NCBI GenBank assembly: GCA_002269645.1
Contig: NIVC01004035.1
Location: 1 to 63,617 of the forward strand
Origin: Macrostomum lignano
Lineage: Eukaryota
Direction of reading: 5' to 3'
Length of the DNA stretch: 63,617 nt
Below, one piece after another: positions 5,552 through 54,221 of this stretch. Made by a program: the position numbers and the translations under genes. The notes beneath the pieces are model-generated. The model was not told the origin of the DNA. It searched no databases and was given only the letters and a program-made list of their open reading frames with translations. Each line of letters starts with the position of its first letter. Within the stretch, counting starts at the first letter, position 1.

Positions 5552-8014
5552 TCATCTCGTAATTTGTCTGAGTTTAGTAGTAAAGGGGACCCTGAACCCT
5601 GGCCTGGCCCATTCTTTGGTGTCATTTTTGAACCCATGGATTTCACTCTCCAGGGCTTTTTTGTACAATTTTTTAGCAAGATAGAGGAGTCGATCCTGAA
5701 CCATGATGTCAATCTTTGTGACCTGGTGTAAGTATGTGATTTTAGTATAAGGCGGAGCATCTATAGAGAGGCAAAGAGCCTTATTTTGCAGAATTTGTAG
5801 CTTGTTAACCAGGGAAGCCAGTAGATTGATGAGCACCGGAGCGCCGTAAGTCATTGTGCTTTCAATGTAAGATTTATAGATGAGGCGAAGAGCCAGTTGC
5901 GAAATCCTGGAGTTCTTAGCTATCCTAGCTAGGGCAGCCATTTTGGCTGTCGAAGACCCAGCTACCTTGTCGATATGGGCCCTAAAGTTAAGCTGTTTGT
6001 CAAGAACCATCCCTAGGAAGGTGACGGAATCATAGTACTTGATTTTGTCTTGTCCAAGTTTAATTGGAGGATCGTCTGGACCTGTCTTGTTCCCATTAGC
6101 TTTGAAAAAGGAAATGGCTTTGCTTTTGGAGGGATTGATGACAATGCCCAAATTGTCAAGCCACTTTTTGAGGACAATAAAGTAGGAGTTAAGCCTTTTA
6201 GCGGACATCGTAGATTTTGTGGCAGAGGCCCATACTGCTAAGTCGTCAGCGAACTGACTAAAGCGGACTTTGGCTGATGTTAGGCTGATGGGTCTATAGC
6301 TTTCCACGAGATTTTTGGATTTGTTTGGTTTAGGGATCATCCTAATGATGGCCTTTTTCCATTGTTTAGGGAAGTATCCTATGAGAAAACTGTAGTTGTA
6401 AATTTTTGCGAGCGCTCTGATGGAGTCTGGGCCGAGACCATATTTCAAAACCATGTTAGGAATTCTATCCGGACCGTGAGCTCCTCCTGACCTAAGTTTT
6501 CTGCTTTCCCAGAGCACGTCCTGGTCAGTAATGTTAAGGATATCGTTTTCGATATCTTCTTTATCTAGATTATCTGGGTTCGCGTGCTCTTTATGGTATG
6601 AAAGTGCCGCAATTATATTGTTATGGGTTTTGAAGATCTCATGATCTTTGTACTTACTGACCTTTTCATAGATTAGCGAGTCGTGGTTGGGGTGAGATTG
6701 CATTTGATCTTTAAGAAAGTCGCTGAAGAGTGAAGCTTTTTCTGCCTCAGTCTCGGCATGCGAATCTTTGTAGACTAGAAGGGGATAGTTGATCATTTTG
6801 GACCTTTCTCCTGTCATCTTTTTGATGTCAATCCAAAATTTTTTGGGTTCCTTTTTATAACTATTTTCGGCAACTTTGTGGCATAGATCCTCGAATTTCC
6901 TATATCTATGCATGCGTATAGCATTTCGAATTTCTTTAGCTGCTTGATTGGCTTGAACCCTGAAGTCGTCTATTCTAGTTTTTTTGAATAATTTTCTAAG
7001 TTTCCTCCTATGCTTAATTTTGTTAATAATATCTGGGGGAAGCTGTTCCCTAGGGTCCCGGTTGGGTACAACATCCTCAATGGTGTCATGAATGCACTGA
7101 TTTAGCAGATCAACCGCTTTGTCTAGGTCCTCAGGTGTGGAGAATCTGCGACTGAGAAGCTGTTGGTTGCTAAGTTTATCCTGAAGGGTCCCTCTAAAGG
7201 TTTCCCAGTCAGTGTTCCAAAAGCTTTTAGTGGGTTTTTTGCTCAGCTTACAGTTAGGATTTAAATAAATTTTAATGATAATGGGGAGGTGGTCGCTATC
7301 TAGATCTTCTCCCACAATAACGTTGCTGGTATGTTTAATTAGCTCCGGGGAACAAATTCCTAGATCAAGCACGTTCCTAAGGACTGAGCCACTACGGTAG
7401 CTGACTCTGGTACAGTCCCCATAATCGTTAAGAATGGTTGGTGGGTTTGGATGCGAGTCAAGCCTATCAAACAGCTGCTTGCCAGGATAGTTAGTTTGGG
7501 AGTCACCACCGAGGGCTGGGTGGTTGCAGTTAAAGTCCCCGACAACTAAGGTCGAGGGATTAGAGAATAAATGGTCAAGAAGTTGGGTGTTAAGCCGTGT
7601 TGGAGTCGGGTTCCTGTAGAAGAGGACCACGTTAAATTGCTTAAGTTTGTTATTTTTAAGATGAACTTTAAAACTGATAAGCTCGTGGTTGCAGTTGTCA
7701 AAAAATTTTTCAACATTCATAATTTCTAAATGATTTTTATAGACAACTGCAAGTCCTCTTCTACAGTTAGGGACGTCAAACCGGAGCGTGGCGTACCCTG
7801 GTAAGTGAAATTTGTTTTTTTCCTCTAGGCATGTTTCAGAGAAAAGCCCAATGTCTAAGTCTTCTTTGTTGATCCAGGATATTATCTCATAGAATTTGTT
7901 GCTAAGCCCGTTGCAGTTGAGATGTCCAATGTTCAGAGTGTCCCGCACAACAGACTGTTTACCCGGCCCATTATTATCAGGGGAATTATTAGATGAGTTG
8001 AAATTTGATATCAA
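5552..8014 (-). CDS. ORF2: APE endonuclease plus reverse transcriptase with in-frame deletion of the central RT motifs; no RNase H
   Basis: HLNCNGL, FSET, VVGDFNCNH, LDLG, DSDHLP (APE); GPDRIPN, YRPISLTS directly joined to QFADD, YLG-like FLGMVLDKQLNF (RT). The QGSxLSP region is missing. Confidence 0.9.
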   Translation of the reverse strand: MISNFNSSNNSPDNNGPGKQSVVRDTLNIGHLNCNGLSNKFYEIISWINKEDLDIGLFSETCLEEKNKFHLPGYATLRFDVPNCRRGLAVVYKNHLEIMNVEKFFDNCNHELISFKVHLKNNKLKQFNVVLFYRNPTPTRLNTQLLDHLFSNPSTLVVGDFNCNHPALGGDSQTNYPGKQLFDRLDSHPNPPTILNDYGDCTRVSYRSGSVLRNVLDLGICSPELIKHTSNVIVGEDLDSDHLPIIIKIYLNPNCKLSKKPTKSFWNTDWETFRGTLQDKLSNQQLLSRRFSTPEDLDKAVDLLNQCIHDTIEDVVPNRDPREQLPPDIINKIKHRRKLRKLFKKTRIDDFRVQANQAAKEIRNAIRMHRYRKFEDLCHKVAENSYKKEPKKFWIDIKKMTGERSKMINYPLLVYKDSHAETEAEKASLFSDFLKDQMQSHPNHDSLIYEKVSKYKDHEIFKTHNNIIAALSYHKEHANPDNLDKEDIENDILNITDQDVLWESRKLRSGGAHGPDRIPNMVLKYGLGPDSIRALAKIYNYSFLIGYFPKQWKKAIIRMIPKPNKSKNLVESYRPISLTSAKVRFSQFADDLAVWASATKSTMSAKRLNSYFIVLKKWLDNLGIVINPSKSKAISFFKANGNKTGPDDPPIKLGQDKIKYYDSVTFLGMVLDKQLNFRAHIDKVAGSSTAKMAALARIAKNSRISQLALRLIYKSYIESTMTYGAPVLINLLASLVNKLQILQNKALCLSIDAPPYTKITYLHQVTKIDIMVQDRLLYLAKKLYKKALESEIHGFKNDTKEWARPGFRVPFTTKLRQITR

Positions 8015-8045
8015 GTTAACGCTAAACGTAATTTAATTGTCAGGT

Positions 8046-10788
8046 TCAGGTTTCATCTCCGCCCGCTTGCGCGGCTTCGGTGTCCCCTGTCCCTGAATCA
8101 GGTCCCCTTCGATTCCTGAGTGCTGCCAGGACTTCAGTCACTGCCTGGATCGCGAGTTGCCCCGCTTCCCATTCAGTGAGCATCTGCCCCGGATTAGTGC
8201 CCATGAGCCGAGTGAGTGCCTGAAGTACAACCTCGAGCACCCCCATCCGGGAGATTAGGCCCCTCTCACTTGATTTGCGCGTGTCATTGGCGTTTTCAAC
8301 TCCTAGATTGGGCGCGGCCACGGAGTCGGAGGCAACTGCCGGCAGCGTGGGCGGATTGGCGGAGATTTGGATTGCCGCCGGATTGGTCAGAGCAGTTCGA
8401 TTCGCCGGCGCTTCGGCTGGTGGGGCATCGCTAGCGGCAGAGGCAGCGGCGGCGGCGGCAGCGGCGGCGGCACGGTTGGAATACGCGATAGGACCCAGGA
8501 TTGGCTTGATGAGTCCAGTTCGCATTGGTCGCATTGCGTCAGCGTAGGATAGCGGTCCTGGTACCCCAAAGGCCTCCCCTAGGGACCGACTAGGTTTTGC
8601 TTCTTCTCTTTGTGCTCTGATTTTTTCGTGTGCTTTTCTAGTTGCAATTTCGTTTGCTTCCTTGATTTTTTGACATTTGAATGAAAACTGCGGGTGCTCG
8701 CCCCCGCAGTTGGCGCATTCGAACTTGCGGTCCTTGGGGCAGTCGGCTGAGAAGTGCTCCCCTGCGCATTTGTTACATCTGTATACTGACGCAGTGCATT
8801 TATTCTCATGGTGCCCTAATCTTTGGCACTTCATGCACTGGATGGCTTTGACAGGTGGAAGATTAATCGACTCCTCGCACCTGAACCTGCTGAAGCCTAG
8901 ATGGACGCCGTGCTCAATGCATCTCTCCATTGCGCCCTTACTCTTCGTGAAGAGGCGAACATGCGGTGATGGTTCACCTGTTGCCTTGGAGATGATGCGC
9001 ACGGCGCCATCAATCGGAATTTGCTGCTCTGACTCTACCAGGTGTTTGGCTAACTCTTTAGCGTCCACCGCAATGGGGACGTGCTTGACAATGAAACAGT
9101 ACACCTGAGGAGATTTAAGAGGTGCACGCACCTGATCGTCCCCTTGTTTTACTGGCCTCTTGGCTGCCATGCGTCTTGTAATTTCAAATTCATTAATTTT
9201 GTTGGTTTTAAGTGGTGCTGTTAGTAATTTATTGTAATCCTTAGGATGTTCTCGAGTTACAATGTAGCCTGAGCTATGGTACAGATCTTTGACCGATTTA
9301 ATTCTAATTTCAGGAAAGTTGTTTTTTAGAAACCATTCAAATTTGATGGGATCCTTGCCTTCATGCTCAATTTCGAAGATGACTGGAGCTGAGTTTTTAG
9401 GTTTTGAATTGTCATTAGTTCTTAGTTGATAGTTGCTGCTTGCAGTGTTAGGTTGGCTGGTTAGATTAGAGCTAAGTTGGCTAGTTTGGCTTTGAGTTTT
9501 AGATTGATTTAGCTGATTATTTTGGCTAGTTTGGCTAGGTTGGCTATTGCAGGTTGTTTTAGTTTCAGTTTGTTGTTGCTGTTGTGTTGTTGTCGGCGGC
9601 GTCAAGTGGATGAGCGTTTGCTGTGAGTTGTCAGATGGCGGCTGCTGCGGCTGCATTTGCATGCTGGCTTGTTGCTGCAAGTTGTGCTTGCTAATGGTTG
9701 ATTGCTGTTCGTGAGCAATTTGCATGTTTTTTTGTTGAGATATTTGAGTGGTTGGCTGCTGACTGCTAGGTTTGCGCCCCGTGCTACTGTTTGAACGCGA
9801 TCTAATTCGTCTCAAATTTTCCGCTTCCAGCTCTGCCCGTCGGCGAACCGAGTCTTCATCATCAAGATCGCAAGTGATGCTGTTGTCGACTGGTTGGATA
9901 CAAGGATTTGCCTGGTCAGAGACAGGAAGTTCTTCCGGGATCCTAGCATCGTGCGTAAGTCTAAACGTGAGGTTGACTCTGAGCTCTTTGACTTTGGGGT
10001 CTTTGAGGACCGCGTGTTGAAGGTGCGATTGTGTTGCACCGCTCATTACCAGCAGCGAGCCACTGGCGAGTCTTTGAGACCATGCGATGTTAGTTGAGCC
10101 TTGGGGCGCATGTGGAAGTCGCGCGTTGCGCCAATCGAGATGGATGCGATAGTCGGGTTAGGCCCTAACTCTACCTCGTCATCAGAGTGCCAGGGGATGT
10201 TGATCGATCCGTCTTTGTAGAAATTGATCAAACATGAGTTGAAGACGGGAAGCTGGTACTCGACTCTGAGCCAGGTGGCTAGGCTAGTGACAAGGGGATG
10301 CCAGTTGTCATTGGCACTAATTTTAGTACCACCATAGGTGTACTCTGGTCCAAACCAAACGATTTTCCGGGCTTCCGGTCTACCGTTGGTGTGGTGGTGA
10401 AAGGCTTTCGCCTGAATCTCGTCAACGAGAATTTTCAAAATTTGATTGTCGCATTTTTTAGAGCCGATGGATGGTAACTAATGTTGCAATTATTTGGTAG
10501 ATTGTATGATTTGCTGTCTGATTTGTCTGGTTTTGGTAGTCTAATAATTGTTGTTACACCTTCAGCTTTCATGACTTCTAGACTACCCCTTTTAGAAGGA
10601 GGCAGCTCACCTTTTGAGGTACCAGGTGGAGTTTCTGGCAGTGGCGCGTTTGACGGAGACAGCATGGTTCGTTGTTCGGATCTGCGGACAGGGCCGGCAG
10701 AGTCTCGGTTGTTCACCTTCTTGGTCGACACCGTCGGCGGCGAGTCAGTGTCTCGTGAGCACCGTTTGCTATTAATTTCGATTTCCAT
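8046..10788 (-). CDS. ORF1 (about 910 aa after correcting 2 frameshifts): AlkB dioxygenase, Gln-rich linker, RRM-like region, three CCHC knuckles
   Basis: Three consecutive ORFs (10435-10788, 10046-10438, 8046-10046) join by single-base shifts. WHSDDE, HAVLKD, RVNLTFR; knuckles CMKCQRLGHHENKC, CNKCAGEHFSADC, CANCGGEHPQFSFKC. Confidence 0.88.
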
Positions 10789-13062: not shown

Positions 13063-13683
13063 ACTCAGTCAAAAAGTGGGGAGGGAAGTGCAAATAATAA
13101 TTTACCTAGTGCAATTTTTTGTATTTTAATTTTTTTTTTACTTTAAAGGTCTTACATAAACTTAAGAGCAAGATGGATGGATATGAATGGGCTTTAAACC
13201 TTTTTTATTTTGTTTTTTGATCAATTGATAAGTCCAGCATAGACTTAAGTACAATATGATTTACTTGTAGGCTTTAACTTCAACTTCAAATGTCAACATT
13301 TTGACAGTACAGCAGAATGAATACATTTTAGGCAAGGAAATAATTCGAAAACCGGCATCCACTTAATAGGTCTAGCCTAATCAAGAATGGGCAAGCCAAT
13401 CTGTCATAAAAAGGTAATTGTTATACATATAGACCAGAAATCTATTAAAATTGGAGAGCAAATTTCCTAGTGCTTGAGGCAAGGCAATCCTTGTATTTAT
13501 TTGTAAGTTAGCAATAACCTTTATTTTACTATTGTTCTAGGGGAAACTCCTGTCCTAATATTTCACCGTGCCACCAAGTTGTAGACCTAGCTGCCCGTCT
13601 AATATCACTAAATGCCTACTTTAAATATTCTAAACTATGAATTTTTCTAGGAATTCCTAACTCACACGATTTCTTAGAAACCT

Positions 13684-14448
13684 TGTGATAGCGTGTAGTG
13701 CCCAAGCGGTAAGCCACTGTCTAATTCCCTAATTCAGTCCTTAAGTCTGACGTTTTCCGAGGATCAAGGGTGTCCAGTGGTAACTAATCTACTTCCCTAA
13801 TGCCTAATCTCTTTAGCGCCTAATGTCTATTGTAGCCTGTACGGCTTTCTTAGGGTCTGTACGACCTCGAGATTCTCCTTCTGGCCTCTATCCTGGGTCT
13901 TCACGACCTCTGGTGGATTTCCTATTCAGGTCCTAGTTTGGGTCTCCACGACCTCAAGTTTCCCTATTCAGATCCCTAGTTTGGGTCTCCACGACCTCAA
14001 GTTTCTTTACTCAGATCCCTAGTTCTTGGTCTCCACAACCTCAAGTTTCCCTATTCAGATCCCTAGTTTGGGTCTCCACGACCTCGATTTTCCCTATTCT
14101 CAAAGAAATAACGAGATGAGTCTTAGCCAAATTTAATTTGTTCCACTAAGAGCTTCTCACAAACAGCAAGAACTGTTAAGAGCAAAATGCCAAACAAGAA
14201 AAGGTTATTTTATTTTAGAGTTGACCCGGATCCCTTTTATACTAAATATTTTGGGAAGAAGGACTACATTAAAACAAAATTGGTGAGTTAAAACAAATTT
14301 AGCAAGAATTAAAACAAAAAAAGGGATAGCATTTAAACAACTAAAGAAATTATTTGATTGGTTGAGAATTTGGTTCGCGCTTAACTACTGTTAGTATTAA
14401 TTATAGGTTAATTAAATCCTGCCTCACTATACATATAATAGCTACACA
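13684..14448. repeat. LTR-like dispersed repeat, copy A (contains about 40-bp tandem subunits)
   Basis: Starts TGTGATAGC and ends GCTACACA; TATA-like and AATAAA motifs on the minus strand; homologous to 22801-22941 + 27264-27888. No canonical PBS or TSD seen. Confidence 0.5.
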
Positions 14449-15267: not shown

Positions 15268-16176
15268 TTTTTGCGGCCTATTTGGTACTGCAAGCTTTCA
15301 TTTTAATCATGGATACGGAAATCAGGCTTGCGAGACTGAAAATTTACTGTCTATGGTCGACACTCATTGGCATAGCGGAGTTCAATTTAATCCTGGGGGC
15401 ATCAATTTGATCATTCTAATCATATAACGTTAGATATCCAGTGCTATAGCACAATTCGTTTACTTATCATTGAGAAAATCTAAAGCAGAACATTACAATA
15501 AACAAATAAAAGCTTTAGCGTTGAATGTCGTCGAGTCAGGCTGAAATAAACCTCCGCATCTGCCGGTACCGCCTCCGCGTTTTGCAACTTTCACCCCACG
15601 GGTTGCGTCCTCTGCAACCCTCTGTAGGACAAGGATTCGCCACTCTCGTAGCGAATGACCATCAGGCGGAGTGTCCAGCTCTTCTTGCAGTTGTGGTTGA
15701 GTCAGCTGGCGTTTGATGGTGCCTTCAGACAGGCGTGCGCGTTTTCCACAGGATTGAGGACTGGAGAGTATGGAGGCAATGTCACCAGGCGCCAATCGGG
15801 CTGAAATTGATCTGGGATTGTCACTCCATGATGAAAACGGGCTCCATCCATGATCACATGATCACACAGAACTCCTCGCTATCAGGTACATCACCACGAC
15901 TCGTCACGCTTTGCACCAGATCATTGATGGACGTCTGGAACCTGAATGCCGTCATAGTCTCTCCGAGGATCATATGATGTAAAAACAAGTTAAAAACAGG
16001 TTTCGCTGACATTAAAAATGTGCATTGAATGCATAGAATGATCAAATTGATCAAAATCAACTCCGCTATGCCAGCGAGTGTCGACCATAGACAAAAAAAT
16101 TGAGTCTCGCAAGCCTGATTTCCGTATCTATGATCAAATTGAAAGCGTGCAGTACCATGCAACTAGGCCGCAAAAA
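15268..16176 (-). mobile_element. Internally deleted IS630/Tc1/mariner-type DNA transposon
   Basis: Diverged inverted repeats of about 150 bp (15268-15416 / 16036-16176) enclose the transposase C-terminus VIMDGARFH...LPPYSPVLNPVE (33 residues between D and E), with frameshifts. Confidence 0.75.
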
Positions 16177-18213: not shown

Positions 18214-18296
18214 TTGTATAGTATGCAACTGAGTTGAATAATGGCCAAAACTCGAGTGCCTATGGCCATTATTCAACGAAGTTGCATACTATACAA
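18214..18296. repeat. Hairpin with 34-bp stem (2 mismatches) and 15-nt loop, followed by 3 copies of CATTATTCCACACTTTT
   Basis: 18214-18247 is the reverse complement of 18263-18296. Confidence 0.85.
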
Positions 18297-18870
18297 GTAC
18301 ATTGTATTTATACTTTCACTCAGCGCTCAGTCATTATTCCACACTTTTGCGGCCATTATTCCACACTTTTGTCGCTGTCATTATTCCACACTTTTTATCA
18401 TGCTTCAATTGGCTGTGTTAAGAGTTGTTTTACCCATAGACGACTGTGTTGTGTGGTTTAGTTTGACCATAGACAACACTGATGAGTGCTGATTTTGCTT
18501 GCGTCTTACAAGAAATCAGGAAAGCGAGTAGTGCGAAAAAAAGCTATTTGTCTTCAATCAAACAACTATGTCTGGTGCGTCTCGTCAAACAGCCGCGCTT
18601 ATTAATTGAAAAAATCTTCCTGTCGAAGACTGAACGAACCGTGCGGCGCTACCCAGGAAGAAAATGCGACCATGCAGTCTTCAACGCCTCGACGGCTATA
18701 AGCGATGTCTCAAAGCGGCCAATCGATTCAGTCGAGCAGCCGACAGTCCCAAAGAATCCCAGCTTGGATACTGCGGTACCAAAGAAGCTCATCAGTCGCA
18801 AGCCAACTTAACCAAGACATGCATCTTTCAAATTGTAAGTTCGGTAACTATACTTGAGCACCTGTATTTC

Positions 18871-19696
18871 TAGAAAGCTTAATATCAACATTTGAATATG
18901 ATTACAATTTCTAACAACTTCAACGCGTTTCGCACGCCATGGTGCATCGTCAGGATTTTATTAGAACGATTTGAGAAATTGAGATTGAAAGCGATTGATT
19001 AAATATTGGTTTTTGCAACGTACACAGGTAAGGAGGGTAAGATTGAAAACAATTGATTACAACTTGGCTTTAACAACATACATAGGTATAGTAGGTAGGA
19101 GAGAGAATTATAGATTGAGAATGAAAGTTAAACCAAATGTACACAATTCTTGTCCAGTGGTCAAAAGGCAGAATCAGGGGAGGTAGCTAGCTAAGGTAAT
19201 TGAACGTCAAGCTAAGTGTACACAGCGTGCACGACTGTGTCACTCACTGTTCAGAAAACGCGGAGAACGTGACCTGCACCACTATGTTGTAATTGGGTGT
19301 TGAGATTCGGGGTCTGAGCTTTTATGTGCAGGGCCTCGAGAATTCTAAGTTTGGCGTCAGTATGGCTTTGGTCAATGATTTTAAAGTGTTCTTCTGGTTT
19401 GCAGTCATTGCCCGAAATATTTGTTCATGGCAATGACCTCCGGACAATGACCGGCCATTTTCTGGAGGTAAAAAAACAAGACTGGACAACAATACCATAG
19501 GCGAAAAAAGTAACACGAAGCGTGAAATTCTTATATTTATTGAAGTCCAACAAAAAATGTTCCAACAATAACACTGCTTAGTCAATTGAGTGCAAGTCTA
19601 ACCTATGGTCATGTTCTCATCACGACAGCAGGAGAAAGTCCAGAAAATACGACGGTTGAGTCCATTACTCAAATTTGCAACCATTGAATGAACAGT
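18871..19696. repeat. Left arm of 826-bp inverted repeat
   Basis: Reverse complement of 21540-22365; the ORF track shows identical peptides on opposite strands. Confidence 0.95.
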
Positions 19697-21121
19697 CGTG
19701 GAAACTGTACCTGACCGACGGATTGTCATGACTGATGCCGGTGATCTGCACGGAAGACGACACAGGTACTGGCACCGGTGAACTCTCACGCAATGGAGTC
19801 GCAACAGCTTGTGAAGAACCATTCAAATCAAGTGCCATAGAAACAGCCTCACTGGTAGACTGCAGCGAGCGATCACGGCGCTTGGACAGGTAACGGCGAG
19901 TTGTCCTCTCAGAAACCTGACCGGTTATCGACATGATGTCAGTCAGGTTGTACCCAGCAGCCTCTAGATCAGCAATCCTGCTCACTCTACAACAGAAATA
20001 AAGTATTGCATAGAAAATATGCAACTGGTTTAAAGCAATATGAAGAAAAAGGCTTACCGAATGCAATGATTCGTGTACATCTTGGACAAACCGGCCTTCT
20101 CGCTCAAGTTTCGCATGAAACGCAGGAAGTAGTTCTCCCCGCGATTCTGCTTTGTTGAGAACATAGGCTGTCCATTGGAATCCGTGTTGGATAGTGGACG
20201 CGGGAACAGATGGTTGTCCTTGGTTGTTGGAGGTAGCAGTTGTAGATATCTCCTCACTTTGGCCGTGTCGTAGATCCGAGCTTGTTTGTTGTCCGGCCTG
20301 GCCTTCGCCTTCACAGGATCGGCTGACTTATTCTTCGTTGGCAGAGCAGGAAGACAGTAGTACTCCTTGCCGTCAGAATCCGTGTGCAATTCAAGCGAGT
20401 CCCTTTGTCTCAGGAACTTCAGATGCTCCTGGCCACGCTCTCCAAAGGAGTAAAGAACATAGAACAGAAATTTAGCCTGCTCGATTTCAGCCGTAGTCCC
20501 TTCAAAGTAGCACCGCAACTTCTGCATGTCGCCTTCTTCAATTGGTTCATACTGCCTGGTGCAGCCACCATCTCGATGGAAATCACGAACCTTGACACGC
20601 AGCATCTCGTTGCAGGAATTGAATTCCTCACCACCGATTATATCGACAGGCAGCTTCAGAACCATGCGTAGGAAACGCTGAATTCCAGCCCGGATACAGA
20701 TGAGAGAGGCCGGCGAGTAGAACGAGCCATCCTGTTTCTTCAGCTTGAAGTAGAAGTACCGAAGATATTGGTTCAATGTAGGATTGTTGACATGCTGAAT
20801 GTTGCGCAGATTCTCCCCTTCCAGGAAGTCTCGAAAACGTTGGCCATGCTGGTACATCTGCTTCCGAGTATCCTCAGGCAGACTCTCGATCTCGATTCTG
20901 TCCATCTCGGAAACGTCTATCTTTTCATCTCCATCGATCATTGGCAGCCCAGTATCAGCTGGACCATTTTGGACATACTTCAGGAACGCATCGAAATCTT
21001 CGTCGTGCCGATCAACGGCAGAGGATTCCGAGAGGAAGTTCAGTTCATCCTGCGTGATGTTGCCGAGGTCCTCACACGGGAGGTTACCCCAATTAATATA
21101 ATGTATTATCGGGTCGCTCAT
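19665..21121 (-). CDS. Crypton-type (DUF3504-like) tyrosine recombinase; exons 21121-20058 and 19986-19665
   Basis: LRYFYFKLKKQDGSFYSPASLICIRAGIQRFL, GERGQE (R), TKNK (K), YTNHCIR (HxxR), ITGQ and RRY (Y). A 71-nt GTAAGC...TTGTAG intron splits the Arg codon and restores the frame. Confidence 0.9.
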
Positions 21122-21128
21122 GATGGAC

Positions 21129-21534
21129 AGAAAACTCTTGAATCAACAGGTTTGGACAGACTACTTACTGCCTGGGAATCCCTCACACAAACCCCTTCAC
21201 CCCCACTGAAAGTTTTGCCATAGACATTTCAACCCTCCATTCAATCAATAGGATTGTCATTGCCATGAACTCTCCACGCCTTTTGGCTTTCGTGCCATAG
21301 ACGTTTGTGCCTCCTCCTTCTGGGCCACTTCGATTCGTGCCATAGATATTTCCTGCAATGAAGTTAACTGGAAGAGAGAACTCCAGGCAACGGCCAAATT
21401 TCCACTCGCGGCTATTGATTGAATGGAGGGTTGAAATGTCTATGGCAAAACTTTCAGTGGGGGTGAAGGGGTTTGTGTGAGGGATTCCCAGGCAGTAAGT
21501 AGTCTGTCCAAACCTGTTGATTCAAAAGTTTTCT
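21129..21534. repeat. Inner 123-bp inverted repeat (21129-21251 / 21412-21534) with 160-bp spacer
   Basis: Direct reading; one mismatch seen. Confidence 0.9.
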
Positions 21535-21539
21535 TCAAA

Positions 21540-22365
21540 ACTGTTCATTCAATGGTTGCAAATTTGAGTAATGGACTCAACCGTCGTATTTTCTGGACTT
21601 TCTCCTGCTGTCGTGATGAGAACATGACCATAGGTTAGACTTGCACTCAATTGACTAAGCAGTGTTATTGTTGGAACATTTTTTGTTGGACTTCAATAAA
21701 TATAAGAATTTCACGCTTCGTGTTACTTTTTTCGCCTATGGTATTGTTGTCCAGTCTTGTTTTTTTACCTCCAGAAAATGGCCGGTCATTGTCCGGAGGT
21801 CATTGCCATGAACAAATATTTCGGGCAATGACTGCAAACCAGAAGAACACTTTAAAATCATTGACCAAAGCCATACTGACGCCAAACTTAGAATTCTCGA
21901 GGCCCTGCACATAAAAGCTCAGACCCCGAATCTCAACACCCAATTACAACATAGTGGTGCAGGTCACGTTCTCCGCGTTTTCTGAACAGTGAGTGACACA
22001 GTCGTGCACGCTGTGTACACTTAGCTTGACGTTCAATTACCTTAGCTAGCTACCTCCCCTGATTCTGCCTTTTGACCACTGGACAAGAATTGTGTACATT
22101 TGGTTTAACTTTCATTCTCAATCTATAATTCTCTCTCCTACCTACTATACCTATGTATGTTGTTAAAGCCAAGTTGTAATCAATTGTTTTCAATCTTACC
22201 CTCCTTACCTGTGTACGTTGCAAAAACCAATATTTAATCAATCGCTTTCAATCTCAATTTCTCAAATCGTTCTAATAAAATCCTGACGATGCACCATGGC
22301 GTGCGAAACGCGTTGAAGTTGTTAGAAATTGTAATCATATTCAAATGTTGATATTAAGCTTTCTA
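21540..22365. repeat. Right arm of 826-bp inverted repeat
   Basis: Begins with the last codons of the YR gene (CSFNGCKFE*) in plus orientation. Confidence 0.95.
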
Positions 22366-23126
22366 TTTATTCTTCTCGCCAAGCGAGCGACTCTACCAGC
22401 ACCTGTATTTCTCTTTCATAGAAAACATTCAACATAGACCAACTCCTTTTGCAGTGCCAAATCATCAGGCTAAAGTGTCGAGCATCTTTGGAAACTGCGG
22501 CTTTGAGAACTGTGCATGCTTCACTTTGGGTGACAAATTGATTTTTACATTGTCAAGTTTTGACTACAAACTGATAAACTGCACTAGCTGTGACATTTAT
22601 TATGAATAAATAATAAATTTATTCATGCTAGCCCTTATGGTTCCTACTGAAATTATCTCACTAATTTGCTGCAGTTCTTTAGTTCTAATTTCTCTATCCT
22701 ATAAATTGTCACTAATATATCTACTTTGAGTAGCGTTGGCAGCCCTAATCTATTACTCTTTCCTAGAAACTTCTAATTTCACACGGCTTCCTAGAAACCT
22801 TGTGATAGCGTGTAGTGCCCGAGCGGTAAGACACTGTCTAATTCCTTAATTCAGTCCGAAAGCCTAGCGTTTTCCGAGGATCAAGGGTGTCCAGCGGCAA
22901 CTAACCTACGACCCTAATATCTAATCTCCTAGTGCCTAATGGACTGGTTTGTGCGGCGAAAGTGCACAAACCGGCTTTAGTGCCCAGCGCGTTGATTGTA
23001 CATCGCCGCCTGCCCCCCCTTGGGTGGCAGGGGTGTTTTTAAACCCCCGTCGCGCTCTACTGGCGGCTCACTTTGCCTTCTCGCAGTGAATTTTTTTGAC
23101 TTAGAAATAGAAACTTTTGCTGAGTC

Positions 23127-24187
23127 ATGAACCGCACCCGTAGCCAGTCAGCCGATTCCGTCCCCACAACTGTGCCAGCACTGCGAGGGAAACTAAAGGA
23201 GCTTGGTTTGCCAACCTCTGGCAACAAAGCAAAACTAGTCCAAAGGCTTCGCGCCCATATTCAAGACGTGGAGACCTCTGTCGAGAGTGACGAGCTGACG
23301 AACGTTCAGGCCATTCTGCGAGCTACAGGGCAGAACTCGGCGGTAGCGAGCAGCGGGGGCAGCCCCCCAAATCGGCGACAGGTCGAGAACGGTGGGTCTG
23401 GCGCGGCTGGCGGCCTGGACGAACAGCTGCTGGAGGCGGAGAAGCGAATCCGTCTGCTGAAGCTGCGCAAAGAAGAAGCGCAGCTGGAATCCGAGTTCGC
23501 GCAGCTACGGGTCGGCCGTTCTGAGGCACGTGATGTACCGGGTGAGTTGCTAAATTGCCTAACTGGATGTGTGCAGCATGAAGTTGGGCAGCAGCATGAG
23601 AACATGGGAGCCTCAGGGAGAAGTACCAGTAGCGTCTACCGAATCGTTGACTTCGTCAGCAAGCGCAAGCAGTGTCTTCTAGGCCAGAGTAAGTCTAAAG
23701 AAGTGGCGGTCGAGGCGCTGTCGTTAGGCGATTGGGTGACGGGCAATGCGCAGGCGATGCTTCAGATGCTGACTGACGGGCGTCTAGTCAGACTGGATCA
23801 GCATGGTCGATTGGATGTGGCAGAGCTCAGAGACTATTTCAGGTACACCGCACGCATTGGCGAGTTGTTGGACCTGGGCTTCGACAAGAGCCGTGTGATG
23901 AGATTTGATGACGAGTGCCGGCTCAGCCAAACGTCTGATGGCAAGTGGGAGTCGCACAGCTCGGACCTGAGTCTGGTTGCGGCGTACCTCATGGCTCCCC
24001 AGAAGCAGCAATCGGGGGTGGTGCCCAGAAGCGCAATCAACTGGTTTGCTTCGACTACAACAGGATACGCGGGTGCGAACGCAAGAGCTGTCGGTTCCTG
24101 CATCGCTGCCGAAGATGCGGCCTGGCGCACTCTGAGGCAGCCTTCCACCGCGACGAATCGAGCGGTGAGGAGAAACCGCAACACTGA
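23127..24187 (+). CDS. Ngaro ORF1 (gag-like) with N-terminal SAP domain and C-terminal Cys/His zinc finger; one frameshift at about 24015
   Basis: LRGKLKELGLPTSGNKAKLVQRL (SAP); CFDYN...GCERKSCRFLHRCRRCGLAH in the -1 frame after a G-run. Confidence 0.75.
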
Positions 24188-24259
24188 CTCGATCATAGCG
24201 CGAATTTTATTCCTCCTGTTTTATCCTCTGATCTCAATCTGGCCCAGTGGCAGGCGGAG

Positions 24260-25800
24260 TTGTCCAAGCTGGATCTCCCGCCCGGTCGGATGGCTTTTAT
24301 CCTTGATGGCGTTGCTAGTGGCTTTCGCATCACCAATCGTCAGATGCATGGCAACGAGCTGGTTGAAGTGGCAAACTACTCATCGGTTTTTAAGCACCAT
24401 GACAGAGTTGCGCGTCAGATTGCTAATGAGCTTCGTCTCGGTCGTTATCGTCTCTGTGCTGCTGGTGACAAACCTCGCATAGTCAGCGCCCTTGGTGCGC
24501 TGCCGAAGTCCAACGGTGGCGTTCGCTTAATCCATGACTGCAGCCGGCCGCAAGGGAAGTCTGTCAACTCCGCTTACGAGAGCGAGCAGAGACTGCGTTT
24601 CACCTGTGTCCAGAACTTTGCTAAGAGGCTTAAGAAGAATTACTTTATGTGCAAGGTCGATCTAAGCGAAGCCTATCGTTCATGTGGGATCCATCCTGAC
24701 GACCAAAAGTTTACCGGTTTGAAGTTTCGGCTAGGTAGCGATGCTTGCGACACCTACATGGTGGACACGCGCCTGCCATTTGGTGCTGCTGCTTCCGTCA
24801 CGGCTTTCTATCATCTCAGCGAGGCGGTCAAGTTGATGATGGTGCACCGCGGCTTCGTCAATACTGAGGCCTATCTGGACGATTTTGCCTTTTGCGGTTT
24901 GCAAAACGAGTGCGAGGCCTTCTTTAATGTGTTGACGTCGCTGATGACCAGACTGGGCTTCACCGTGAATTGGACGAAGTGTCAGCGGCCTTCGCAAAGG
25001 ATGACGTTTCTCGGTGTGGAGCTCGACACCGTCAAGGGCCTGAAGCGGCTTTCAGACGAGAAAGTGGAGAAACTTTTAGAGCAACTGGACGATGCTGCTG
25101 CCAAGGATCGCATCAGCAAGCAAAGTTTACAGCAGATCATCGGCAGGCTGGTGTGGGCTTCGCAGGTGATCGAATGCGGTCGCCCCTTTCTTCAGGACCT
25201 GATTTCGCGCTCTAACAATTTGGCCGTCGGTCAGCAAGATGAGGTGGATGCGGCCCTGCGTAGTCAGCTGCGCTGGTGGAAGTGTGCTCTGCTAGCTCAA
25301 AGGTGGAAGACTCTCTGGTTCAATGGCGACTTCGATGCCGCGATCGAGTCGGACGCCTGCCTGGTGGGCGGCGCTGCCGTGCTGCGGTTGCCGGGGGCGT
25401 GAGTGACTGGCGCTACGTTAATTGGGATCTCGACGCGGATGCTGTTTTTCGGGATCTGCCTATCAATTACAAGGAGGCTGCGATACCTCTGATGGCGTTG
25501 CTGTCGTGGCGGGACCGCCTGCACAACTGTCGGCTGTGCATCTACTGCGATAATATGGCAGCGTGCTGTATTATCAACAATGGGGTCTCCAAGTGCCCTC
25601 TGGTGTTGAGGCTGTTGCAGACGGTGGCGCTGCTTTGCATTCGTCAGAACATTCAGCTGCGTGCTTACCATGTGCCAGGGCCGTTTCAAATTTTTGCTGA
25701 CGCCGCGTCTCGGCTGCACGAGGGCAGTCAGTTGTTGAATTTTTTGCTGCGCTTTTATGGCTCATTGATGCGTCTCACCAATTGCTCGCTTTCCCGGCAC
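24260..25800 (+). CDS. Ngaro reverse transcriptase plus RNase H; one frameshift at the G-run at about 25395
   Basis: RLIHDCS, KVDLSEAYR, LPFG, YLDDF, FLGVELDT; RNase H IESDAC, INYKE, YCDN, ADAASR. Confidence 0.9.
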
Positions 25801-26828
25801 ACGCTTTCTGCTGCCACATCCGCTTTTCTCCGTTTTCAGGTCGCCAGACTGCGCCAGACCACCTCAGCCACCGAGCCCGTGAACTACTCGGTTCCTCCTA
25901 CGCGGCCCGCTCGAAAAGCGCCATCAGCTCACACGTGCGGTCCTGGCGCGCGTACTGCTCAGCCAAGGGACTCGACCCCGCCGGGTGTACTGTGTCCACG
26001 CTGCTAAACTACCTGGCTGGCCTCACGGGCACGCGCCTGCGAGCCTACAGTAGCATTCGCGGTCACGTCAGCTCGCTTTCACTGTGGTTTCGGCTGAACG
26101 GCGCTCAGGACCTGACAAAGCATACCCTCACCCAGCATCTGCTGCGGGGCTGCAAGCGAGCGCTGGGGCTTCAGGTCAACCAGAAGCTACCAATGTCTCC
26201 GTCGGTGCTGCAAAAGCTTTGGTCTCTGGTTGACAAGGGCGACAATCGGCAACTGGCCTGCTGGGCGGTCACCATCACTGCCTGGTGGGGAATGCTGCGA
26301 AAATCATCACTCCTTCTATCGTCGCCTCAGTTGGGTAGTGGGATGAAGGTGCAGAATCTGACACCTCACCGTTGCGGCCTCCTCTTAAGCGTGGACTTTG
26401 GCAAGACTATTCAGTTCCGTGATCGAGTCCACCACGTCCTGCTTCCGAAGTTCCCCGCCTGCCCCGCGCTCTGCCCGGTAGTGGCGATTCGCCGACATCT
26501 GTGTGTCAACAAGCTGGCGATGGCCGAGGCGCCACTCTGGTCCTTCATCGATCGCAATGGACAGCGGCGCCATCTAGCTGCTCGGGACTTGGACCGGTTT
26601 CTTGAATCTAAGCTGCAGAGGGCTGGGTGTGGCGGCAAGCTCTACTCGGCTCACAGCCTGCGTCGAGGTGGAGCCACCTGGGCAGCTCGCATGGGCCTGC
26701 CGGTGGCGGAGATCCAGCGGATCGGCGACTGGAAGAGTTCGGCGGTGGAGCGCTACTTGCCCCGCTCGGGTGTTGCCACTGCTGCGGCCTCTCTGCATTT
26801 TTCTTCCGCCCTTAGTGCTCATTTTTGA
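25782..26828 (+). CDS. Ngaro tyrosine recombinase
   Basis: GMLRKS (R), FGKT (K), HSLRRGGATW (HxxR), GDWKS (W) and ERYL (Y). Confidence 0.92.
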   Translation: MLAFPAHAFCCHIRFSPFSGRQTAPDHLSHRARELLGSSYAARSKSAISSHVRSWRAYCSAKGLDPAGCTVSTLLNYLAGLTGTRLRAYSSIRGHVSSLSLWFRLNGAQDLTKHTLTQHLLRGCKRALGLQVNQKLPMSPSVLQKLWSLVDKGDNRQLACWAVTITAWWGMLRKSSLLLSSPQLGSGMKVQNLTPHRCGLLLSVDFGKTIQFRDRVHHVLLPKFPACPALCPVVAIRRHLCVNKLAMAEAPLWSFIDRNGQRRHLAARDLDRFLESKLQRAGCGGKLYSAHSLRRGGATWAARMGLPVAEIQRIGDWKSSAVERYLPRSGVATAAASLHFSSALSAHF

Positions 26829-29800
26829 CGGTGGTCTTCCCGCTGATTTGTTTTTTGCTCAATGCCTAGCTGCTGCTCTTATCCCCCGTTGTGTTTGGCT
26901 TTGGAGGCCTGCTTCGTTTCTGTGCCAAGTTCGTGTTTTAATTGCCTTTGTTGCTGGAAGCACTAATGGACTGGTTTGTGCGGCGAAAGTGCACAAACCG
27001 GCTTTAGTGCCCAGCGCGTTGATTGTACATCGCCGCCTGCCCCCCCTTGGGTGGCAGGGGTGTTTTTAAACCCCCGTCGCGCTCTACTGGCGGCTCACTT
27101 TGCCTTCTCGCAGTGAATTTTTTTTTCTTTTTCGTGTTAAGTTTGCTTTAAGCCAAATATACTCGTAGATTGAAGTTCGAAACACTTTTTTATTGACGGA
27201 GGCCTGCTTCGTTTCTGTGCCAAGTTCGTGTTTTAATTGCCTTTGTTGCTGGAAGCACTAATGTCTATTGTTAGCCTGTACGGCTTTCTTAGGGTCTGTA
27301 CGACCTCGAGATCCCCACCTTTAACCTCTATTCTGGGTCTTTACGACCTCAAATTCCCCTATTCCAGATACCTAGTTCCGGGTCTCCTCGACCTCTGACT
27401 GCCCTATCTAGAATCCTGGTCTTGGGTCTCCACGACCTCTGGTTTTCCTATCTAGAATCCTGGTCTAGGGTCTCCACGACCTCTGGTTTTCCTATCTAGA
27501 ATCCTGGTCTAGGGTCTCCACGACCTCTGGTTTTCCTATCTAGAATCCTGGTCTAGGGTCTCCACGACATCTGGTTTTCCTTTTTATGAAAGAAATAGCG
27601 AGATAAGTCTTAGTCAAAAACTTCAAGTTTGCTTACTAAGAGTTCTCGATAGTTAATCAGGTAACACCAGATCAATTTTTATTTTGGCCAACTCGCCTCC
27701 TTTTATACTAAATTTTGGGAAAAATGGGGGACGCATTCAAACAAAAAGGCAAGATTCAAACAAACAAAAATTCAAACAAAATTAGATATTTAAACAAATT
27801 TGAACAGGGAATTCTATGATTGGTTTGGAAATTAAACGCTAAGTTAGCTACTACGAGTACAACGGCTCGTATAGTCAAAATATACACACCCTACCTCATT
27901 AACAAAAATACTGAGTGATGGATTTTTTCAATTCAAATGTCTATGGTACACGTCAAAACTGTGGAATAATGGCTAAAATATTTTGTTATTGCGTCTGGGT
28001 AAAAGTATAATTACAATGACGAAAGTACATAGCGATTAAATACATGCATACATAAAATGTAATTCTATTTAGCACAGCAAAGTTAACTCAGTAAAGTAAT
28101 GCTTCAGGGTCAGGAACTCCACTGGTTGAATCTGTCATATATTTTACCAGTAATCTAATAGCATAAATGATATGCTTCTCGTACCCTGACAATCATTCAG
28201 TATCAACCTAACTGTACAGTTATGTTTAAGGCTACTTGTGTAATCAATTTCGAACTTGTAACTTGTAACTGTCAGCTCGGCTTCTTTAAACTTTACGACA
28301 TGCCAATGATCGCGCCAGTGTAAGGCGTTCCTATGAAACTGCGTGCTTTGGAAGGCGCCAGCGAAGGGACAGCGAGACCAGACGACAGCGGGAATAGCGA
28401 AGACAAAAAAATACTGGCCTGTGCCCGCTGCCCTTCAACCTAATTTTTCTATTTTTAACTTATTTTGTTTAGCCGCCATATAGAGAATTAAATCTATTAA
28501 TCTATAAATCTATTAAAACTATCTAAATTGAGTTAACTTGAATAATAATAAGAGAGACGAGAGTCTGGCGCAGGGCCCAAACCGATTCATTTAGGGCATT
28601 TATTTTGGGCTTTGAGTGCAATTGGATTTAGACGAAGAGGGGTGAAGTGCACGACTGAGGAAAGAGGCAAGAATGGAGAGCCAATCAGAAGCCAGGGGAG
28701 AGAGATAGGAATTACAAAATTGAACCAGAGACAGAGAGAAAACAGAGTAAACAGAGACGAGTGAAGGTGAAATAGGAAATGCTTAAAAAACTCACGACAC
28801 GCTTTAAACTCAACAAGGGACCGAACCGGAATTTAGCGACTTATAGGTTAAGCAAAAAGAAAGTAAAATGAAGGGAAACCACAACCGCGATGAAACAATG
28901 ACCTGAATTTTTTCATTGGTTTGTTTAACTCAAAGCTGGAGCGTCGTGTAATCTCTTTATGTGTCTTTCAGAGCTGCATAGAGAACGACTAATTGTACCT
29001 GGAATCGGCGTCTTAGAAGGTTATAATGAGTGGCTAGACAATATTCAGGGGCAGTCTAAACCACCTTCTTCATAGACAAGTCGACTCTTTTTGTCGACTT
29101 TAGTGGTCATACTGTGTTAAAAAAAGAAATCAAGTATTCCTTTTGACGGGGGACATGTCAAAAGCTACGGGAGACATGCCATTTCCTTGTCCCCCCACAC
29201 CACCTTGTGACCCGTTGTGGAAATCAATAATTTTGCTTCCGGGTGCCAAAATATAAAGCATTTTACTGGCCTCTAAAAGAAGTGTAAATGTTTATCACCA
29301 ACAATTTTTTTTGAATCTTGGCTTGAAGCTATAGCTTTTTTTAAATTAGTTTCAGTTTCTGCTGGATGTGTTCCGAAGCGAATATCCTGACTTTGTAACA
29401 AGAATTGTCTCTAGAATAATGAATGTTTTTTTAGGTTTTGTAGAAAAATACAAAACAATTTTCAGGCTCTTCTTAAGCATTACGGATCCTAGTTAAAATA
29501 TACTGCCGGCATATAATTGGCGCACTCGACAAGCTTGCTTCTTACTTGAAACCCCAGATAAGGGAGGTGTCATTTTGCTAAGACCGAGAAACAGCTGCGC
29601 ACTCATATCTCGTACCCTCGTAGCTACTGCCAAGTATACCAAGTATGCCAAGTATCAAGCACCGGTGCATTTACCATGTGCAATGGAGTCGACAGTACGC
29701 AAACCGGGCAGTGTACACTCTAGCCTCTTTTTCTCTCTCTTATCTTGACTGTTTTTCCGTCGTTGCTTTATGCTCAACTTTTTTCTTTCTTTCTTACCGA

Positions 29801-33302: not shown

Positions 33303-46882
<13,580 letters not shown>

Positions 46883-50723: not shown

Positions 50724-50949
50724 TACAGCAGGTGGGGTTGTAGTATATCATAAATAACATGTCACACACAGCTGGTACCAGAATAGGAAAAATTTCAACG
50801 CGTTAGCCTTTTCTGGCCAATCGAACGCAAGCTAGAGCGTGCGTAAAATACAAAAATATTTATATATAAAATATACAAAATAAACAAAATATACAAAAAT
50901 ATACAAAATATACAGAATATACAAAAATATTTAACAAAAAAAAATAACT

Positions 50950-54205: not shown

Positions 54206-54221
54206 AATATTAAAATAAAAA

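What the first reader, a model, noticed from the sequence alone, without database searches (positions are those of the whole stretch)
18871..22412. 3.5-kb palindromic Crypton recombinase element with 826-bp inverted arms and a 15-bp flanking direct repeat
Seen: DR(15) - arm(826) - YR gene - a'(123) - spacer(160) - a(123) - arm'(826) - 33-bp filler - DR(15). The right half is the same element in opposite orientation with the coding region deleted (5' UTR fused to the last 9 codons), so this is a head-to-head dimer centred on the promoter spacer. Arms are identical as far as I can read, so it is recent. Established: described Cryptons lack long TIRs and long TSDs; long-TIR elements with a YR are known in ciliate Tec elements; head-to-head dimers are intermediates of hairpin replicons resolved by YR-family telomere resolvases. 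Inference: either a new TIR-type YR transposon architecture, or a trapped fold-back recombination/replication intermediate. It would also produce long dsRNA if read through.
Basis: partly seen in the sequence, partly recalled or inferred. Interest (0 to 1): 0.8.

Follow-up and report, generated by a model that had tools for sequence, protein, structure and literature searches.

The report
Crypton transposon with inverted partial self-copy
The 3.5-kb palindrome is real, but it is most likely an intact tyrosine-recombinase (Crypton) transposon of a flatworm-like genome carrying a gutted copy of itself inserted backwards near its 5' end, not a new kind of transposon with long terminal inverted repeats.

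Summary
The outer inverted arms are 826 bp and 100% identical. The inner arms are 123 bp with one mismatch, separated by a 160-bp spacer. A 15-bp direct repeat flanks the whole unit, with 32 bp of filler on the right.

The gene is an intact two-exon, 461-aa CryptonA/DUF3504-type tyrosine recombinase (YR). The catalytic residues R, K, H, R and Y are all present.

The right half (D) is a copy of the same element with two losses: the coding region, replaced by a 5-nt insert, and the distal 5' region.

The spacer is not host DNA and not a palindrome centre. It is the full copy's own 5' region, conserved in a related element from another species even though synonymous sites are saturated.

D is flanked by a 5-bp repeat (CTATT), and its outer end matches the full copy's 3' end within 2 nt.

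The whole unit lies inside an older, decayed Crypton relic.

Best reading (about 0.5): a canonical 2.57-kb Crypton bounded by the 15-bp repeat, with a deletion derivative re-inserted in inverted orientation.

I could not test whether the palindrome recurs elsewhere, because the genome is not in any searchable collection.

By-product: short sequence motifs flank the YR gene in inverted orientation in three related families. In two of them the motif differs by two bases in every copy.

The parts
18857..18871 (.). Left copy of the 15-bp direct repeat AGCACCTGTATTTCT; its last base is also the first base of the outer arm
18871..19696 (-). Outer arm L: the 3' part of the full copy F. It holds the last 29 nt of the coding sequence, the stop codon and 794 nt downstream, with AATAAA 124 nt after the stop and a 58-bp tandem repeat at 18982-19097
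19404..19451 (-). 3' cluster of the 9-mer motif GTCATTGCC (three copies, two forming a 9-bp stem). Mirrored at 21785-21832 in arm R. Homologous block in L001
19665..21121 (-). Intact YR gene, 461 aa: exon 1 21121-20058, 71-nt GT..AG intron 20057-19987, exon 2 19986-19665 (stop included)
21129..21251 (-). Inner arm a': proximal 5' leader/promoter of F, starting 7 nt upstream of the ATG; contains one TGTCTATGG motif (21218-21226)
21252..21411 (-). 'Spacer': the distal 5' region of F, absent from D. Homologous to nt 3-72 of L001. Carries GTCATTGCCATGAAC (21256-21270, an inverted copy of 19423-19437) and two more TCTATGG motifs (21295-21303, 21340-21348)
21412..21534 (+). Inner arm a: 5' leader of the deleted copy D. 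Starts with CTATT and has one mismatch to a'
21535..21539 (+). 5-nt insert TCAAA at the deletion junction of D; 1,432 bp (19697-21128) are missing. The insert resembles GATTCAAAAG about 10 nt upstream
21540..22365 (+). Outer arm R: the 3' part of D, identical to arm L
22363..22367 (.). Second copy of CTATT; with 21412-21416 it forms a 5-bp direct repeat flanking D
22366..22397 (-). 32-nt 'filler', unique in the window. On the favoured reading it is the 5'-terminal 32 nt of the full element, cut off from the rest by the insertion of D
   Evidence: the assignment is inference
22398..22412 (.). Right copy of the 15-bp direct repeat
18482..18811 (+). Left flank: decayed C-terminal fragment of an older Crypton YR (..SKTERTVRRY..STAIS; the HxxR motif is lost). 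The palindromic unit is inserted into this relic in the opposite orientation
22475..22522 (+). Right flank: VSSIFGNCGFENCACF, matching the family's C-terminal V..F..C.F..C.F motif; probably the end of the same relic

Best explanation
The unit is a nested composite of two copies of one CryptonA-like YR transposon.

Step 1 (inferred). A canonical element E1 of about 2.57 kb (18872-21411 plus 22366-22397) integrated into the tail of an older, decayed Crypton relic. This left the 15-bp sequence AGCACCTGTATTTCT on both sides, as expected when a YR joins a circular element to a target that shares its crossover sequence.

Step 2 (inferred). A derivative D of the same or a sister copy, 954 bp in place, re-inserted in inverted orientation 32 bp from E1's 5' end at CTATT. 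D had lost the coding region through an end-joining deletion with a 5-nt insert. It had also lost the roughly 207 bp spanning the circle junction.

The 826-bp and 123-bp 'arms' are therefore the sequence the two copies share, not terminal inverted repeats used for transposition. The 160-bp 'spacer' is E1's own constrained 5' control region.

Consequences (inferred):
- The YR gene keeps 290 bp of native upstream sequence and is probably still expressed.
- The composite could still move as a unit through E1's ends.
- The identical arms can flip the central 1.8 kb by homologous recombination.
- Read-through transcription would give an 826-bp hairpin RNA, a possible silencing trigger like maize Mu killer.
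For: Shown by tool results:
- The anatomy and the identity of the arms.
- An intact spliced YR with R229, K263, H352, R355 and Y387. The family profile hits the XerA recombinase at E=4.7e-7. Nine of 10 aligned relatives hit Phage_integrase, 8 of 10 the QRICH1 domain and 4 of 10 DUF3504.
- Purifying selection against L001 (dN 0.22, synonymous sites saturated), with the same intron position.
- The spacer aligns to L001 nt 3-72: score 60 against a shuffle maximum of 38. It therefore belongs to the element, and D lacks it.
- D is flanked by CTATT at both ends, and its outer end coincides with E1's 3' end within 2 nt.
- The 15-bp direct repeat brackets the whole unit.
- Both flanks carry remnants of another Crypton YR on the opposite strand.

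From the literature:
- Cryptons integrate at short direct repeats of 4-6 bp, and internally deleted non-autonomous derivatives are known (PMC3212892).
Against: - D's 5' end is not E1's 5' end. D lacks 192 bp, including conserved motifs, so D is not a canonical non-autonomous copy, and how it integrated is unexplained.
- A 15-bp direct repeat is longer than any reported for Cryptons (4-6 bp).
- The contig of relative L001 starts within about 6 nt of the F|D junction (21411). This could mean the element's true 5' end is there and the 32 nt are not part of it.
- There is only one locus. No empty site and no second full copy are available.
Confidence: 0.5

Rival explanations
1. In-situ inverted partial duplication. 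After E1 had inserted, a broken or stalled replication end switched templates three times by microhomology. It copied 21251->21129, then 19696->18871 in reverse, and returned at CTATT.
For: Junctions show 3-5 nt of microhomology (CTATT, CTA) and a 5-nt insert that looks templated. D lacks sequences a competent transposon copy should keep. Arms are 100% identical.
Against: The copied segment stops within 2 nt of E1's own 3' boundary. Template switching on a chromosomal copy has no reason to do that; my estimate is about 0.4-8% by chance, depending on the microhomology required.
Confidence: 0.12
2. The palindromic composite is itself a propagating form. Either it is a Crypton lineage whose mobile unit carries long inverted repeats, or it is a 2-micron-like flip-flop unit. 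It arrived here as one piece.
For: The 15-bp direct repeat flanks the whole composite, not F alone. Related families place copies of a binding-type motif in inverted orientation on both sides of the gene. An older relic in the same window is bracketed by a roughly 200-bp inverted repeat: score 79 against shuffles of 36.6 +/- 6.7.
Against: The arms include coding bases and equal the full 3' part of the element, as expected from duplication. One side lacks the constrained 5' region. Relatives F, L001 and L007 show no extended 5'/3' inverted repeat beyond the motifs (z of 0.4-1.5). There is no second copy in the window.
Confidence: 0.2
3. Assembly artefact: a chimeric or fold-back long read, or polishing that made the arms uniform.
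For: Perfect arm identity. I have no read-level data.
Against: A fold-back read gives S followed by the reverse complement of S. It does not give an arm with a 1,432-bp deletion, a 5-nt insert, an asymmetric 160-bp spacer, a mismatch in the inner arm, and a return to unique flanks with a 15-bp direct repeat.
Confidence: 0.06
4. A trapped head-to-head dimer of a hairpin-ended replicon awaiting resolution by a telomere-resolvase-like YR.
For: A YR gene lies next to a large palindrome.
Against: The centre is not palindromic: the spacer is asymmetric and homologous to a single-copy upstream region. The protein matches Phage_integrase, XerA and DUF3504-type recombinases, with no resolvase family hit. 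The unit is chromosomal and has direct repeats at its edges.
Confidence: 0.02
5. The YR is a domesticated host gene, and the palindrome is a local rearrangement of a gene region rather than transposon activity.
For: Strong purifying selection, a conserved intron and a conserved upstream block between species. One copy per data set. The second catalytic His is Gln in this subclade.
Against: The catalytic R, K, H, R and Y are retained, unlike known domesticated DUF3504 genes (PMC3212892). The unit is bounded by a direct repeat and nested in another Crypton relic. Several paralogues exist in Macrostomum lignano.
Confidence: 0.05

Closest known systems
CryptonA / DUF3504-type Crypton DNA transposons (Kojima & Jurka 2011, PMC3212892; Glomhopper, PMC13465315)
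   Same: A single gene encoding a YR related to DUF3504/QRICH1-domain proteins. No reverse transcriptase. Short direct repeats at an insertion (CTATT around D). Internally deleted derivatives exist.
   Different: Reported animal Cryptons have no terminal repeats of any kind. Here a 15-bp direct repeat bounds the unit, and 826-bp and 123-bp inverted repeats arise from a nested inverted copy. Short inverted motifs flank the gene, which has not been described.
Maize Mu killer and Ac/Ds inverted duplications (PMC3440606; bioRxiv 10.1101/2020.01.07.897926)
   Same: A partial inverted duplication of an autonomous transposon. Read-through would give a long hairpin RNA able to silence the family.
   Different: Those are DDE transposons in plants with demonstrated siRNA production. 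Here transcription and small RNAs are untested.
Maize 'double Ds' (one Ds inserted into another in inverted orientation; from my own knowledge, not checked here)
   Same: Self-nesting of a deletion derivative into a copy of its own family in opposite orientation.
   Different: Cut-and-paste hAT element with 8-bp target duplications. Its chromosome-breaking behaviour is not implied here.
DIRS1-type retroelements and ciliate Tec3 (YR plus long inverted terminal repeats)
   Same: A YR gene between long inverted repeats.
   Different: DIRS elements need reverse transcriptase, RNase H and an internal complementary region, and none is present in this unit. The neighbouring Ngaro-like element's YR is only 21% identical to the Crypton profile. 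The Tec3 comparison rests on my own knowledge; the paper was not read.
Yeast 2-micron plasmid (FLP between 599-bp inverted repeats; from my own knowledge)
   Same: A YR gene flanked by long perfect inverted repeats that allow flip-flop inversion.
   Different: An extrachromosomal circle with partition genes and defined FRT sites. Here the unit is chromosomal, and no recombination site has been defined in the arms.

Membership tests
Crypton (CryptonA/DUF3504-type) YR transposon | Encodes a tyrosine recombinase with the catalytic R-H-R-Y tetrad (plus K) | tested here: met
   R229, K263, H352, R355 and Y387 are invariant or nearly invariant in alignment A1. The second His is Gln in this subclade. 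The profile hits XerA 5hxy at E=4.7e-7.
Crypton (CryptonA/DUF3504-type) YR transposon | The YR belongs to the DUF3504/QRICH1-related clade rather than to DIRS/Ngaro YRs | tested here: met
   The protein's own hits are weak: QRICH1 E=3e-3 and Phage_integrase E=1e-3. Relatives linked at E<=1e-44 carry PF12012 plus PF00589. Identity to the adjacent Ngaro-like YR is only 21%.
Crypton (CryptonA/DUF3504-type) YR transposon | No reverse transcriptase or other transposition protein in the element | tested here: met
   The only long ORF in 18872-22397 is the YR; the other ORFs are short and mirror each other in the arms.
Crypton (CryptonA/DUF3504-type) YR transposon | No terminal inverted repeats; only short (4-6 bp) or no direct repeats at the ends | tested here: inconclusive
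   D is flanked by 5-bp CTATT, which fits. The whole unit is flanked by a 15-bp direct repeat and contains 826-bp inverted repeats, which does not fit unless the inverted repeats are secondary.
Crypton (CryptonA/DUF3504-type) YR transposon | Multiple dispersed copies / evidence of mobility | not testable with these tools
   The source genome is absent from every collection. The only evidence is two copies here plus nesting in an older relic.
TIR-type DNA transposon | Inverted repeats are the element's termini and recur in independent copies with a fixed-length target duplication | not testable with these tools
   No other copy is available. Against membership: the arms reach 29 nt into the coding sequence, and one side lacks the conserved 5' region.
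Hairpin-telomere replicon dimer junction | Perfect palindrome through the centre; telomere-resolvase-type enzyme | tested here: not met
   A 160-bp asymmetric centre homologous to a one-sided upstream region. The enzyme matches integrase/Xer-type families only.
DIRS-like retroelement | RT/RNase H plus YR, inverted terminal repeats plus an internal complementary region | tested here: not met
   No RT or RNase H in the unit. The RT-bearing element at 22745-27590 is separate.
Mu killer-type silencer locus | Inverted partial duplication of an autonomous transposon | tested here: met
Mu killer-type silencer locus | Read-through hairpin transcript and derived small RNAs that silence the family | not testable with these tools
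   No expression or small-RNA data are available.

The most novel reading that the evidence does not exclude
Flatworm CryptonA-like elements, unlike all described animal Cryptons, work through inverted recombinase-binding motifs on both sides of the gene. This palindromic composite would then be a propagating form: mobile as a unit, and able to flip its centre like the 2-micron plasmid. The older relic in the same window, bracketed by a roughly 200-bp inverted repeat, would be a second example.
Probability: 0.15. Interest if true: 0.6.

Novelty: new member of a known kind. Interest (0 to 1): 0.35.

Why it matters
How animal Cryptons find their ends is unknown, because no terminal repeats have been found in them.

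This locus, compared with two relatives, offers testable candidates for the cis sites. One is a 9-12-nt motif present once, inverted, about 100-140 nt upstream of the ATG and two to three times after the stop. It differs by two bases between this element (GTCATTGCC) and L001 (GTCATTAAC) in every copy. The other is a TGTCTATGG motif upstream of the gene.

The locus also provides defined junctions (a 15-bp and a 5-bp repeat) from which circle junctions can be predicted and tested by PCR.

The inverted self-copy is a natural candidate trigger for small-RNA silencing of an apparently young, intact transposon family in a regenerating-flatworm lineage.

If the palindrome is only a one-off nesting, it is an ordinary transposon rearrangement.

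Tried and rejected
1. 'Two independent insertions 160 bp apart in host DNA.' This looked attractive because both copies share the ends CTATTG... and ...GCTTTCTA. I rejected it because the spacer is homologous to the upstream region of L001.
2. Host tandem duplication as the source of the 15-bp repeat. There is no similarity beyond the 15 bp in the reconstructed empty site.
3. Filler copied from elsewhere. The 32-mer is unique in the window even with 3 mismatches allowed.
4. Similarity of the left flank to the element's 5' region is at chance level. The flank turned out to be a different, older Crypton relic.
5. An extended degenerate inverted repeat between the 5' and 3' regions of F, L001 and L007 is not significant. 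Only the short motifs are.
6. Other copies or relatives with context:
   - The window's ORFs are not on record.
   - The metagenome scan gave three short, distant loci.
   - The profile search gave 17 relatives, all on contigs under 2.6 kb.
   - DNA for one contig was unavailable.
7. A tRNA or other RNA gene as integration target: none found.
8. A dyad-symmetric core site at the predicted circle junctions: nothing convincing. The candidate site CAATGAC-aatccta-TTGATTG next to D's 5' breakpoint remains conjecture.
Full report
OBSERVATION

The repeat finder reproduces the described anatomy exactly.
- Outer inverted arms 18871-19696 and 21540-22365 are 826 nt and 100% complementary.
- Inner arms 21129-21251 and 21412-21534 are 123 nt, separated by 160 nt. 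They have one mismatch, 21137 against 21526.
- The 15-mer AGCACCTGTATTTCT lies at 18857-18871 and 22398-22412.
- The 15-mer has no third copy in the 63.6-kb window even with two mismatches allowed.
- The 32-nt stretch between arm R and the right repeat is unique in the window.
- No other copy of any part of the unit occurs in the window.

The only correction is 32 rather than 33 nt of filler.

THE GENE

- On the minus strand, exon 1 (21121-20058) and exon 2 (19986-19665) are joined across a 71-nt GT..AG intron. Together they give a 461-aa protein.
- The protein's own Pfam hits are weak: Phage_integrase E=1e-3 and QRICH1 domain E=3e-3.
- Its relatives include 'Tyr recombinase domain' proteins of the flatworm Macrostomum lignano at about 50% identity. 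More distant proteins carry DUF3504 plus Phage_integrase.
- Of ten aligned members, nine hit Phage_integrase, eight QRICH1 and four DUF3504.
- The family profile finds the XerA recombinase structure at E=4.7e-7.
- R229, K263, H352 and Y387 are invariant in alignment A1, and R355 is nearly so (≥90%). The second histidine is glutamine in the closest subclade.
- Against the closest relative (L001, a 1,963-bp Logan contig from another organism), identity is 69% over the spliced proteins. dN is 0.22 while synonymous sites are saturated, and the intron sits at the same codon and phase.
- DUF3504-related YRs are the hallmark of animal Cryptons (PMC3212892).
- The YR of the neighbouring retroelement is only 21% identical to the Crypton profile.

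So this is an intact, selected, CryptonA-type recombinase gene.

HOST

A neighbouring AlkB-like gene (2482-3807) has Macrostomum lignano proteins as its best matches, at 55-58% identity. The window therefore probably comes from a related flatworm (inference). That genome is not in the searchable collections.

WHAT THE RIGHT HALF IS

The right half, D (21412-22365), is the 123-nt proximal 5' leader joined to the last 29 coding bases, the stop codon and 794 nt of 3' sequence. The join carries a 5-nt insert, TCAAA. This is the form of an internally deleted, non-autonomous derivative, which is known for Cryptons (PMC3212892).

WHAT THE SPACER IS

This is the key result.
- Nucleotides 3-72 of L001, upstream of its YR gene, align to 21404-21335. 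The score is 60, against a shuffle mean of 19 and maximum of 38. This holds even though synonymous sites between the two genes are saturated.
- The spacer is therefore a constrained part of the full copy's 5' region. It is neither host DNA nor the centre of a palindrome.
- D lacks it.
- This rejects the 'two independent insertions into host DNA' model. It also rejects the symmetric head-to-head dimer and hairpin-intermediate models.

JUNCTIONS

- D begins with CTATT (21412-21416), and CTATT recurs at its other end (22363-22367). This matches the 4-6-bp direct repeats described for Crypton insertions (PMC3212892).
- D's outer end coincides with the full copy's 3' boundary within 2 nt.
- The 15-bp repeat brackets everything.

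The simplest ordering is as follows. An element E1 (18872-21411 plus 22366-22397, 2,572 bp) integrated with a 15-bp repeat. D then inserted into E1 in inverted orientation, 32 bp from E1's 5' end. Every step of this history is inference from one locus.

Weak points of this ordering:
- D's 5' end is internal to E1: 192 bp are missing, including conserved motifs.
- A 15-bp repeat is longer than any reported for Cryptons.
- The L001 contig starts within about 6 nt of position 21411.

CONTEXT

- The unit lies inside another, older Crypton.
- The left flank encodes, on the opposite strand..KKSYLSSIKQ..SKTERTVRRYPGRKCDHAVFNASTAIS (18482-18811). tblastn to relative P0003 gives 55% identity over 38 aa at E=1.3e-4, and the family HMM gives E=0.0035.
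- The right flank encodes VSSIFGNCGFENCACF (22475-22522), matching the family's C-terminal motif.
- Nesting of Crypton into Crypton thus occurred at least once here, which makes a second nesting (D into E1) more plausible.
- That relic, the unit and the adjacent Ngaro-like element are bracketed by a roughly 200-bp inverted repeat, 18228-18425 against 28093-27895. The score is 79 against shuffles of 36.6 +/- 6.7. I could not tell whether this repeat belongs to the relic.

CIS MOTIFS (BY-PRODUCT)

- All five exact copies of GTCATTGCC in the window lie in the unit. There is a cluster about 230 nt after the stop codon, mirrored in arm R. There is also one inverted copy at 21256-21264, about 140 nt upstream of the ATG and 5 nt from D's 5' breakpoint.
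- L001 has the same layout but with GTCATTAAC: five copies, and none of that variant in E1.
- A third family, L007 (38% identity), has one inverted AAAGTATCCAGACAATGA upstream and three tandem TCATTGTCTGGACACTTT directly after the stop.
- TGTCTATGG-type motifs recur upstream of the ATG: three in F, two in L001 and one in L003.
- Beyond these motifs there is no significant 5'/3' inverted repeat in F, L001 or L007.
- The native architecture of the clade is therefore short inverted motifs, probably protein-binding sites (inference). It is not long terminal inverted repeats.

RIVALS

- In-situ template switching would explain the microhomologies. It would not explain why copying stopped at the element's own end.
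- A propagating palindromic family cannot be excluded, because the 15-bp repeat encloses the composite and recurrence could not be tested.
- An assembly artefact is unlikely given the deletion, the asymmetric spacer, the mismatch and the unique flanks.
- A domesticated gene is unlikely given the retained catalytic residues, the bounding repeat and the nesting.

COMPARISON AND VERDICT

The element is a new, apparently young member of the CryptonA kind in a flatworm-like genome. The palindrome most resembles self-nested or inverted-duplicated transposons such as double Ds (from my own knowledge, not checked) and Mu killer (PMC3440606). It shares their predicted consequences: hairpin RNA on read-through, and flip-flop inversion. 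None of these consequences could be tested here.

Interest is moderate. The structure itself is probably an ordinary rearrangement. However, the locus offers the first concrete candidates for cis sites and crossover sequences of an animal Crypton.

Noticed in passing
window 18482-18811 (+) and 22475-22522 (+): Decayed C-terminal remnant of a second, older Crypton YR, closest to relative P0003 and with the HxxR motif lost. The palindromic unit splits it, and the 15-bp repeat lies within or just after its C-terminal tail.
   Followed up: partly
window 18228-18425 vs 28093-27895: Diverged inverted repeat of about 200 bp (score 79 vs shuffles 36.6 +/- 6.7). It carries three tandem CATTATTCCACAC units, CCATAGAC motifs and a 34-bp-arm hairpin (18214-18296). 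It brackets the relic, the unit and the Ngaro-like element. It may be the ends of the old element, or two copies of a small repeat.
   Followed up: partly
window 22745-27590; also 13630-14099: Ngaro/DIRS-like YR retroelement. ORFs: SAP-domain 23127-24482, RT 24260-25402, YR 25782-26828. Split direct repeats: 22936-23102 = 26963-27129 and 26903-26968 = 27198-27263. A 44-bp tandem array lies at 27380-27581. A solo-like remnant sits at 13630-14099.
   Followed up: partly
window 22406-22424 vs 22751-22769: The right edge of the insertion site (TATTTCTCTTTCATAGAAA) matches the 5' terminus of the Ngaro-like element at 17 of 19 positions. The window-wide E-value is about 0.5, so it may be chance.
   Followed up: no
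L001 (Logan SRR28338156) 1-1963; L007-L010 (SRR228243xx): Related Crypton genes carry family-specific inverted motifs on both sides of the ORF. The L001 contig starts and ends within a few nt of these motif clusters. Those ends could be element ends or assembly breaks.
   Followed up: partly
window 15283-16157: Internally deleted Tc1/mariner-like relic with terminal inverted repeats of about 110 bp (15283-15392 / 16049-16157). The DDE-type remnant is judged by eye only.
   Followed up: no
window 5552-10046 (-): Non-LTR retrotransposon: an endonuclease plus reverse transcriptase ORF (5552-8014) and an upstream 666-aa ORF with no family hit.
   Followed up: no
window 53168-57386 (+): Polinton/Maverick-like genes: rve integrase (53168-54205) and protein-primed family-B DNA polymerase (55770-57386).
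   Followed up: no
window 37353-38863, 39448-40615, 44265-45485; 36507-37014, 41102-41942, 43498-44049, 50949-51554: Kilobase-scale tetranucleotide arrays ((TCTG)n, (TAAC)n, (ATCT)n) and several 21-90-bp minisatellites. These imply a long-read assembly.
   Followed up: no
window 2482-3807 (-): Single-exon AlkB-like 2OG-Fe(II) oxygenase gene. Its best matches are Macrostomum lignano proteins (55-58% identity), and it was used to guess the host lineage.
   Followed up: partly
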